Sequence record: KT919972.1
Reading direction: 5' to 3' (one strand)
Length of the DNA stretch: 64,000 nt
Translations under genes and position numbers: made by a program
The notes under the pieces: generated by a model
What the model saw: the letters and a program-made list of their open reading frames with translations, nothing else
Told to the model about the DNA's origin: nothing
The model's database searches: none
Part shown: positions 45,953-46,512 of the stretch, piece by piece
Layout of the letters: every line of letters begins with the position of its first letter
Numbering within the stretch: the stretch's first letter is position 1

Positions 45953-45976
45953 CTCGCTTGATAAGTGAGAGTACAT

Positions 45977-46099
45977 TGGTCGAGTGTAACGGAATCGAAC
46001 CGTTCCCACGATCTCCCTATGATATGCGTAAATTGGTTGCTGAATATAATCATGTCTGATTACAGTATGCTACGTGTGCTGCCACTACACCAACACTCG
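45977..46099 (-). ncRNA. Pro-like tRNA body (AGG) with a 49-nt insertion at position 28/29
   Basis: C1-G72, A73, CCA; loop AT-AGG-GA; insert holds a hairpin + ATTCAGCAA; 21-bp extended acceptor duplex. Confidence 0.75.
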
Positions 46100-46120
46100 A
46101 CCAATGTACTCTCGATATTT

Positions 46121-46259
46121 TAAATGTGCGCTACTTGCACGCCGACTGAGCGAATTTTAACTCAGCTAGTTTTTGATTGAGAATTCGTCCGCTAAGAGTA
46201 TCCCTGCACGCCAGAACGTATACTGGCTCCATGTATTCATTGCGGCTAACGCACATTTA
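46121..46259 (-). ncRNA. structured RNA with a long closing helix (variant GCCGCAA)
   Basis: TAAATGTGCGTTA/TAGCGCACATTTA, then GCCGCAA and two internal hairpins. Confidence 0.55.
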
Positions 46260-46266
46260 AAATATT

Positions 46267-46371
46267 ACTCATCTTCAGAGAAGAGGCAGAAACGATGAGT
46301 TTAGTCTGCTTAATCAATATTGTTCATCTTCAATAAGAGGCGAGAACGATGAACTTAGCTCGCTTAATCAA
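46267..46371 (-). repeat. tandem pair of ~50-nt pseudoknot-forming repeats
   Basis: two copies with compensatory stem changes, at the 5' end of the RNA-gene transcript. Confidence 0.75.
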
Positions 46372-46377
46372 CTGTGT

Positions 46378-46512
46378 TAATCTTAACATCATTTCAGTGT
46401 AAGTCAACAACTTTTTTTTCAAATATTTCATCGAGTTGAAAGTTTGTGTTCTGTCTCTCGACTCGATGAAATACATTCTACATGCTTTTCAGAATAAGTC
46501 AACAACTTTTTG
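46378..46512 (-). promoter_or_regulatory. tandem sigma70 promoters for the RNA-gene cluster
   Basis: two copies of AAAAAGTTGTTGACTTA followed by TAGAAT and TAAGAT -10 boxes, separated by a 13-bp inverted repeat (TATTTCATCGAGT/ACTCGATGAAATA). Confidence 0.75.

What the first reader, a model, noticed from the sequence alone, without database searches (positions are those of the whole stretch)
46267..46371. Tandem covarying pseudoknots at the very 5' end of the RNA-gene transcript
Seen (- strand, just after the promoter near 46378-46410): TTGATTAA-GCGAG-CTAA-GTTCATC-GTT-CTCGC-CTCTT-ATTG-AAGATGAAC, then TTGATTAA-GCAGA-CTAA-ACTCATC-GTT-TCTGC-CTCTT-CTCTG-AAGATGAGT. Stem 1 covaries (GCGAG/CTCGC versus GCAGA/TCTGC), the loop-to-tail pairing covaries (GTTCATC/GATGAAC versus ACTCATC/GATGAGT), and the linkers CTAA, GTT and TCTT..AAGA are invariant. 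This is the pattern expected of a functional RNA fold. The topology (stem, loop pairing with a distal strand beyond a small hairpin) recalls preQ1-II riboswitches, and the phage encodes QueE, but the preQ1-II consensus nucleotides are not clearly present and no ORF follows. Inference: an unknown tandem aptamer, small ribozyme or nuclease-blocking element.
Basis: partly seen in the sequence, partly recalled or inferred. Interest (0 to 1): 0.66.

Follow-up and report, generated by a model that had tools for sequence, protein, structure and literature searches.

The report
Tandem pseudoknot RNAs opening phage RNA operon
Two back-to-back 54/55-base RNA pseudoknots at the start of a KVP40-like Vibrio phage's tRNA/non-coding-RNA operon are real, strongly conserved and match no described RNA family; they look most like the RNA antidotes of bacterial suicide toxins, but their job is untested.

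Summary
On the minus strand, unit A (46371-46318) and unit B (46317-46263) follow a conserved sigma-70-type promoter. Each folds as an H-type pseudoknot with a 5-bp stem 1 and a 7-bp stem 2.

Across 19 distinct units from KVP40-like phages and one unrelated marine contig, every scored pair is canonical. Seven of the 12 pairs show double (compensatory) changes. About 26 loop and tail positions never vary.

No Rfam family matches, including preQ1-I/II/III, ToxI, tmRNA and the small ribozymes. No ORF, terminator or toxin gene follows.

A new result is a single-copy relative 9 nt upstream of a tRNA-Asn in a marine contig. That contig shares only two proteins with KVP40.

The function is not shown. 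My best guess (about 0.3) is a processed protein-binding decoy RNA. The closest model is an orphan type III (TenpI-like) antitoxin array: the repeat length, copy number, fold, single-stranded tails and promoter placement all fit. No cognate toxin or host copy was found.

The rivals are a cis-acting leader element, a small-molecule aptamer and a self-cleaving ribozyme.

The scan had already noted this element on related phage DNA (s1-158642, s1-159132), with the same cautious reading.

The parts
46380..46407 (-). Promoter P2: -35 TTGACT (46407-46402), 16-nt spacer, -10 TAAGAT (46385-46380). The predicted start is an A near 46373-46375.
   Evidence: Consensus scan. The hexamers are conserved while the spacer varies in six phages. 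The transcription start itself is inferred; there is no RNA data.
46318..46371 (-). Pseudoknot unit A, 54 nt. 5' tail UUGAUUAA; S1 GCGAG/CUCGC; L1 CUAA; S2 GUUCAUC/GAUGAAC; L2 GUU; L3 CUCUUAUUGAA; 3' tail AAUA.
   Evidence: Sequence; covariation; CM scores of 77 and 73.6 bits.
46263..46317 (-). Pseudoknot unit B, 55 nt. 5' tail UUGAUUAA; S1 GCAGA/UCUGC; L1 CUAA; S2 ACUCAUC/GAUGAGU; L2 GUU; L3 CUCUUCUCUGAA; 3' tail AAUA.
   Evidence: Sequence; covariation; CM scores of 81.4 and 81.2 bits.
46475..46502 (-). Upstream promoter P1 (TTGACT-16-TAGAAT). Transcripts from it would also read through both units.
   Evidence: invariant in six phages.
46424..46473 (-). A 19-bp hairpin between P1 and P2. It shares UUCAUCG/CGAUGAA with stem 2 of unit A.
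   Evidence: Inverted repeat I3; conserved, with some paired changes in D480 and 1.081.O. Any link to the pseudoknots is not shown.
46115..46265 (-). The next RNA module. It is closed by a 19-bp stem that begins 1-2 nt after unit B's tail.
   Evidence: Inverted repeat I2. It shows that the units are followed by structured RNA, not by a gene or a terminator.

Best explanation
Each 54/55-nt unit is a self-contained H-type RNA pseudoknot. It holds about 26 invariant nucleotides in three loops and a single-stranded 5' tail, on a scaffold of 12 covarying base pairs. Two units are made head to tail as the first ~110 nt of the early, untranslated tRNA/ncRNA transcript.

I think they are most likely released at the A/U-rich linkers and act in trans as small protein-binding decoy RNAs. 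The best-precedented version is an orphan type III (TenpI-like) antitoxin array. Made early in infection, it would keep a host abortive-infection endoribonuclease inhibited, as the pseudo-ToxI repeats of phage phiTE do.

Shown: the fold, its conservation, the promoter motif, and the absence of an ORF, terminator or toxin. Inferred: transcription, processing, binding, and the identity of the partner.
For: The fold and purifying selection on the loops are shown.

The architecture matches published type III antitoxin arrays:
- tenpIN repeats are 39-57 nt (mean 50.9) in 1.9-3.0 copies, and occur in Vibrionales. The promoter sits at the start of the array (PMC3401426).
- All solved type III antitoxins are pseudoknots with single-stranded 5' and 3' ends, and CptI is a classic H-type pseudoknot (PMC4627078).
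- A phage-encoded antitoxin mimic has precedent (PMC3475682).

Here there are 54 + 55 nt in two copies, plus the retained AAUAUU junction after unit B. Both units have a conserved 5' tail, and a strong early promoter lies 2-4 nt upstream.

The same module has moved into a contig that shares only two of its 115 ORFs with KVP40. One of the two belongs to a family seen only in Vibrio phages. That fits a mobile accessory or anti-defence cassette.

Copy number varies from 1 to 2.
Against: No terminator or toxin gene follows. No ToxN, PemK/MazF or Abi_2 homologue is present in KVP40, 1.081.O or the marine MAG.

No bacterial copy of the motif was found in one genome per 185,579 species, in 241 million metagenome records, or in PLSDB plasmids. 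The known phage mimic closely resembles its host antitoxin.

Units A and B are only 76% identical and have stayed distinct across the clade. ToxI's repeats in a bacterial array are near-identical.

Rfam ToxI gives no match. There is no RNA-seq to show processing. I could not obtain a TenpN or TenpI sequence or a Vibrio genome to compare.
Confidence: 0.3

Rival explanations
1. Cis-acting leader element. The nascent pseudoknots act on the transcribing RNA polymerase or the processing machinery, for example processive antitermination of the put/EAR/boxA kind. This would let several kilobases of untranslated RNA genes be transcribed and matured.
For: The units lie at the head of an untranslated array that runs to the terminator at 42795-42775. 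In the marine contig the unit lies in the leader, 9 nt before the first tRNA. The invariant CUCUU of L3 equals the core of boxA (my own knowledge of the boxA consensus), and the D480-type B unit reads UGCUCUUUA.
Against: Other candidate promoters inside the same RNA cluster lack the unit. The boxA-like stretch overlaps paired S1, carries an extra C in most units and varies after CUCUU. Structured RNA is a poor Rho substrate anyway. One copy should be enough.
Confidence: 0.17
2. Tandem small-molecule aptamers: a new riboswitch-like class, with ligand unknown. 7-deazaguanine or NAD-related metabolites are candidates, because the phage makes them.
For: The pattern of conserved loops and junctions with covarying stems, in tandem copies, is the classic riboswitch signature. 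KVP40-like phages encode QueC. Both proteins shared with the marine contig are NAD-linked: Sir2, and a small protein next to the NMN adenylyltransferase gene.
Against: There is no expression platform, no downstream gene, and no terminator or sequestered Shine-Dalgarno sequence. No known aptamer model matches. The marine contig has no QueC. Distribution is very narrow for a metabolite sensor.
Confidence: 0.14
3. A new small self-cleaving ribozyme that cuts the polycistronic RNA precursor into modules.
For: The size (54 nt) and pseudoknot complexity resemble pistol and twister (my own knowledge). The setting is non-coding, phage-borne and tandem, always directly upstream of another structured RNA. 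A 2H-phosphoesterase gene (57B), which could handle cyclic-phosphate ends, lies two genes upstream.
Against: No ribozyme model matches. Only two helices and three loops are present, with no P2/P3-type elements. 57B occupies the same position in T4-like phages generally, so it says little.
Confidence: 0.12
4. A passive structural element: a stabiliser, a folding insulator or spacer between RNA modules, or a block to exonucleases.
For: It lies at the 5' end in KVP40-like phages and between structured modules elsewhere.
Against: About 10-12 unpaired nucleotides would precede the fold, too many for 5'-end protection (established E. coli work, my own knowledge). Near-invariant loops across two otherwise unrelated elements are not expected of a mere spacer. 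Gammaproteobacteria lack 5'-3' exonucleases (my own knowledge).
Confidence: 0.08
5. A DNA-level element (iterons, origin or operator) and not an RNA.
For: Direct repeats sit next to strong promoters in an A+T-rich stretch.
Against: Two interleaved inverted repeats, both kept by compensatory changes, point to a single-strand fold. So do the different stem sequences in the two copies of one phage. A G.U pair in 1.081.O works only on the transcribed strand.
Confidence: 0.03

Closest known systems
Type III antitoxin arrays (ToxI, CptI, TenpI) and the phage phiTE pseudo-ToxI decoy
   Same: Tandem head-to-tail repeats of about 50 nt in about two copies. Each repeat is an H-type pseudoknot with single-stranded tails. 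The promoter is placed at the start of the array. The tenpIN family is known in Vibrionales, and a phage-borne mimic has precedent.
   Different: No terminator or toxin gene follows, and no toxin homologue occurs in the phage. No similar host array was found. The two repeats are only 76% identical, with diverged stems. The array is fused to a long RNA-gene operon.
preQ1-II and preQ1-I riboswitches
   Same: A small pseudoknot with a 5-bp first stem, and a possible small hairpin in the long loop. The phage has queuosine-precursor genes.
   Different: No model match even at E <= 10. The third loop is pyrimidine-rich, not A-rich. No regulated gene or Shine-Dalgarno sequence follows. Stem 2 is 7 bp.
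T4-type gene 32 mRNA leader pseudoknot
   Same: An H-type pseudoknot of similar size (5-6 + 7 bp) at the 5' end of a T4-family transcript, followed by A/U-rich UUAA-type sequence (PMC3014915).
   Different: It is not upstream of gene 32 or of any ORF. The loops are much longer (4, 3 and 11-12 nt). It is tandem.
Pistol self-cleaving ribozyme
   Same: About 50 nt. A 5-bp hairpin whose loop pairs with downstream sequence over 6-7 bp. Phage-associated (my own knowledge).
   Different: No P2/P3 helices and no match to the Rfam model.
boxA/nut and put/EAR antitermination RNAs
   Same: Promoter-proximal position at the head of an untranslated operon. The CUCUU core matches.
   Different: The full boxA consensus is present in only one sub-lineage. 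The stretch is partly base-paired. No boxB-type hairpin is present.

Membership tests
preQ1-II riboswitch (RF01054) | Match to the family covariance model | tested here: not met
   No hit at gathering score or at E <= 10 on 701 nt and 126 nt.
preQ1-II riboswitch (RF01054) | Lies in the 5' UTR of a queT-type gene, with the Shine-Dalgarno sequence in the pseudoknot | tested here: not met
   No credible ORF or Shine-Dalgarno sequence lies downstream. Structured RNA follows.
preQ1-I riboswitch (RF00522) | Model match and an A-rich 3' tail docking in stem 1 | tested here: not met
   No hit. L3 is CUCUU..UGAA.
Type III antitoxin array (ToxI/CptI/TenpI) | Tandem direct repeats of 31-62 nt in about 1.9-5.6 copies | tested here: met
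   54 + 55 nt, two copies, head to tail. Ranges are from PMC3401426.
Type III antitoxin array (ToxI/CptI/TenpI) | Each repeat folds as a pseudoknot with single-stranded 5' and 3' ends | tested here: met
   Covariation for both stems. The 8-nt 5' tail and 4-nt 3' tail are unpaired.
Type III antitoxin array (ToxI/CptI/TenpI) | Promoter positioned at the start of the repeats | tested here: met
   The -10 hexamer ends 8 nt before unit A. This is a consensus match only; no start-site data exist.
Type III antitoxin array (ToxI/CptI/TenpI) | A terminator and then a toxin endoribonuclease gene directly downstream | tested here: not met
   No terminator or ORF follows. No ToxN, PemK or Abi_2 occurs in KVP40, 1.081.O or G002. 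A TenpN/CptN model was not available to me.
Type III antitoxin array (ToxI/CptI/TenpI) | Cleaved by, and inhibits, the cognate toxin | not testable with these tools
   Needs co-expression and RNA end mapping.
Phage antitoxin mimic (pseudo-ToxI type) | Sequence resemblance to a host antitoxin | tested here: not met
   The loop-pattern scans of genome contigs and metagenome contigs found only a phage-like marine contig. PLSDB blastn found nothing. Limits: one genome per species and a strict pattern.
Small self-cleaving ribozymes (pistol, twister, hatchet, HDV-like, hammerhead) | Match to the Rfam models or the core helices | tested here: not met
   No hits at E <= 10. Only two helices are present.
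tmRNA pseudoknot domain | Model match above threshold, in a tmRNA context | tested here: not met
   10.3 bits against a gathering score of 47, over part of the model only. The hit was absent on re-search. ARAGORN finds no tmRNA.
boxA antitermination site | Single-stranded GCUCUUUA-type consensus | tested here: inconclusive
   CUCUU is invariant. The full UGCUCUUUA occurs only in D480/F86 B units. Elsewhere there is an extra C and variable 3' positions, and the GC is paired in S1.

The most novel reading that the evidence does not exclude
KVP40-like vibriophages, and at least one unrelated marine phage-like element, carry a fixed, horizontally mobile RNA-only counter-defence. It would be an orphan pseudoknot antitoxin, made at the very start of infection, that disarms a host abortive-infection RNase. 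This would be the first natural, conserved RNA antitoxin decoy outside laboratory-selected phiTE escapes. My evidence equally allows a new self-cleaving ribozyme class or a new aptamer class.
Probability: 0.22. Interest if true: 0.8.

Novelty: new variant of a known kind. Interest (0 to 1): 0.55.

Why it matters
This is a compact RNA fold with unusually clean covariation and no match in Rfam. It sits at the head of the RNA-gene island of a well-studied phage group. If it is an antitoxin decoy, it would show that phages keep RNA-only anti-defence genes as stable genome features. It would also point to a matching, still unseen toxin system in marine Vibrio. If it is a ribozyme or aptamer, it would add a new small class. 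In each case it gives a 54-nt object that can be tested directly with standard RNA biochemistry.

Tried and rejected
- **Rfam.** The gathering-score search of the whole window found only tRNAs. Permissive searches of 701 nt and 126 nt found nothing relevant; a 10-bit tmRNA fragment did not recur.
- **Nested MFE folding.** It is not better than shuffles, which says little for a pseudoknot.
- **Extra copies.** Covariance models R1 and R2 find none in the window, the whole KVP40 and 1.081.O records, or the 75-kb marine contig.
- **Pattern scans of IMG/VR.** Five scans returned only KVP40-like phages plus chance hits with at most 7 of 12 pairs.
- **blastn of the marine locus against phages.** It hit only the tRNA.
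- **RNA-seq.** No RNA run holds the region.
- **Ro60-like link.** DUF2828 is present in KVP40 and 1.081.O but not detected in the marine MAG, so no association is shown.
- **Candidate partner protein.** The small protein shared with the marine contig (phrog_21038/19361) also occurs in Vibrio siphophages that lack the pseudoknot. I rejected it as an obligate partner.
- **gp57B synteny search.** It gave no new loci.
- **Data I could not get.** The direct comparison with Vibrio tenpIN was therefore not done.
- **Mini-ORF reading** (AUG in stem 2 of unit A). Rejected: the AUG is lost in F86-type and marine units, and 1-nt indels break any frame.

Full report
**What is there.** The window is a KVP40-like T4-family Vibrio phage. 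The stretch is 100% identical to phi-Grn1 at the same coordinates, and about 50 Schizotequatrovirus/Mylasvirus records carry it. On the minus strand, a sigma-70-type promoter (TTGACT-16-TAAGAT, 46407-46380) is followed within a few bases by two head-to-tail units. Unit A is 46371-46318 and unit B is 46317-46263. Each reads:

5' tail UUGAUUAA / S1 (5 nt) / L1 CUAA / S2 (7 nt) / L2 GUU / S1' / L3 CUCUU-N2-3-UGAA / S2' / tail AAUA

The stems interleave, which makes an H-type pseudoknot. No credible ORF overlaps or follows. Unit B abuts the 19-bp closing stem of the next structured RNA. The first strong terminator on this strand is at 42795-42775. The units therefore open a multi-kilobase untranslated tRNA/ncRNA transcript (28 tRNAs).

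**Is the fold real?** I collected units from 15 phage records, two IMG/VR contigs and one other lineage, giving 19 distinct sequences.
- All 225 scored cells are standard pairs.
- Four of the 5 S1 pairs and 3 of the 7 S2 pairs show changes on both sides.
- None of 500 shuffles reaches the covariation score, and registers slid by 1-3 columns pair only 25-56% of cells.

- S1 G-C to A-U in the A units of nt-1, F86 and D480.
- S1 G-C to A-U in the B units of KVP40, VS1 and nt-1.
- Two S2 pairs changed in the F86/D480/K566 B units.
- A G.U pair in 1.081.O, which works only on the minus-strand RNA.

One nuance: a 1-nt deletion at the S1/L3 border in the F86/D480/K566 B units leaves the terminal S1 pair ambiguous. 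It reads as A.C in F86/D480 and A-U in K566.

About 26 positions, almost all in the loops, the 5' tail and the inner three S2 pairs, are invariant. The promoter spacer next door varies freely. Each stem is stable on its own (about -4.5 and -7.8 kcal/mol). Nested folding alone is unremarkable. One-nucleotide indels in L1 and L3 rule out coding.

**Distribution.** Covariance models with either stem paired find only these two copies in the window. They find two copies in the whole KVP40 genome and one in phage 1.081.O, which has a single unit at the same promoter-proximal place. Pattern scans of IMG/VR return only KVP40-like phages.

Scans of 185,579 species genomes and 241 million metagenome records found one more lineage. 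It consists of two Tara contigs and a 75-kb contig binned into a Chloroflexota MAG. There, a single unit with new compensatory stems (GCACA/UGUGC; GAUUAUC/GAUAAUC) but identical loops lies about 130 nt after a promoter-like site, behind another closed RNA module and 9 nt upstream of tRNA-Asn.

That contig has 13 tRNAs. Its ten largest ORFs match no PHROG, and a set of ten ORFs on the related contig L140 gave no Pfam hit above threshold. Only two of its 115 ORFs resemble KVP40 proteins: a Sir2, and a small protein next to the NMN-adenylyltransferase gene. The small protein family occurs only in Vibrio phages, including siphophages without the pseudoknot. It is therefore not an obligate partner, but it suggests a shared gene pool.

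**What it is not.** It matches no Rfam family. That includes preQ1-I/II/III, ToxI, tmRNA (a 10-bit fragment did not recur), pistol, twister, hatchet and HDV-like ribozymes, and the NAD or SAM pseudoknot aptamers. The preQ1 idea has only circumstantial support: QueC occurs in KVP40-like phages but not on the marine contig. No regulated gene follows.

**How it probably works.** The design looks like a recognition module: covarying scaffold, invariant loops and single-stranded tails, tandem copies with deliberately different stems, and transfer as a cassette between otherwise unrelated elements. Its closest published architecture is the type III antitoxin array:
- tenpIN repeats are 39-57 nt in 1.9-3.0 copies, and the family occurs in Vibrionales.
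- The promoter is placed at the array start (PMC3401426).
- All solved antitoxins are pseudoknots with single-stranded ends (CptI a classic H-type one) and are cut out by the toxin (PMC4627078).
- Phage phiTE escapes ToxIN with pseudo-ToxI repeats (PMC3475682).

An early-expressed orphan array would fit a decoy that keeps a host abortive-infection RNase inhibited. Several things count against this:
- No terminator or toxin follows, and the phages have no ToxN, PemK or Abi_2 homologue.
- No host-borne copy was found in genomes, metagenomes or plasmids.
- The two repeats are only 76% identical.

I could not fetch a TenpN/TenpI sequence or a Vibrio genome to compare. I therefore put the decoy reading at about 0.3, of which the type III mimic is about 0.2.

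The rivals are:
- a cis-acting leader, such as antitermination or processing (0.17). The CUCUU of L3 equals the boxA core, and one sub-lineage reads UGCUCUUUA. But the stretch is partly paired and variable, and other promoters in the cluster lack it;
- a small-molecule aptamer without a recognisable expression platform (0.14);
- a new self-cleaving ribozyme that dices the precursor (0.12);
- a passive stabiliser or spacer (0.08). This is disfavoured by the roughly 10 unpaired 5' nucleotides and by the loop invariance;
- a DNA-level repeat (0.03).

**Earlier notes.** Two earlier notes of this scan, on related phage DNA (s1-158642, s1-159132), reached the same fold and the same cautious antitoxin-like reading. 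They are not independent evidence. Other notes describe Ro60-like protein and Y-RNA-like genes in the same cluster. I confirmed DUF2828 in KVP40 and 1.081.O but not in the marine MAG, so no link to the pseudoknot is shown.

**Verdict.** This is a real, conserved, undescribed pseudoknot RNA motif. The function is unproven, and it is testable with simple assays.

Noticed in passing
L151-L154 (G002:C11, 75,369 bp); also L140 and L141: A marine contig binned in a Chloroflexota MAG looks like an unknown phage or mobile element. It has 13 tRNAs, with repeated Arg-tct, Leu-taa and Met-cat sets and one CUA-anticodon (suppressor-type) tRNA. Its ten largest ORFs have no PHROG hit. Open-frame lengths give no sign of stop-codon recoding.
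   Followed up: partly
window 46424-46502 (-): A second conserved promoter (P1) drives a 19-bp hairpin just upstream of P2. The hairpin shares UUCAUCG/CGAUGAA with stem 2 of unit A, so P1 transcripts could form alternative pairings with the first pseudoknot.
   Followed up: partly
L222:789-1130 (KVP40.0210) and L151:19637-19981(-): A small protein family (phrog_21038/19361) occurs only in Vibrio phages (54 of 54 records) and on the marine contig. In KVP40-like phages it directly precedes the NMN-adenylyltransferase (nadR/natV) gene. Its function is unknown. The KVP40 start codon looks mis-annotated, because the match begins 42 nt upstream.
   Followed up: partly
L003:398-622 (KVP40.0320); L005:444-752 (QD01_350-353); L007/L008 small CDS: Several records annotate short hypothetical ORFs across the promoters and pseudoknots. 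These are almost certainly spurious calls on non-coding RNA DNA.
   Followed up: no
W02 (1.081.O) 155312-155881; W01 (KVP40) 73684-74325: KVP40-like phages carry a strong QueC homologue. 1.081.O has a second QueC-like frame with an in-frame TAG.
   Followed up: no
window 46115-46265 and 45967-46113 (-): Directly after the pseudoknots come two RNA modules, each closed by a 19-21-bp perfect or near-perfect stem. The second contains a tRNA-like body. Other notes of the scan treat these as Y-RNA-like partners of a Ro60-like protein.
   Followed up: no
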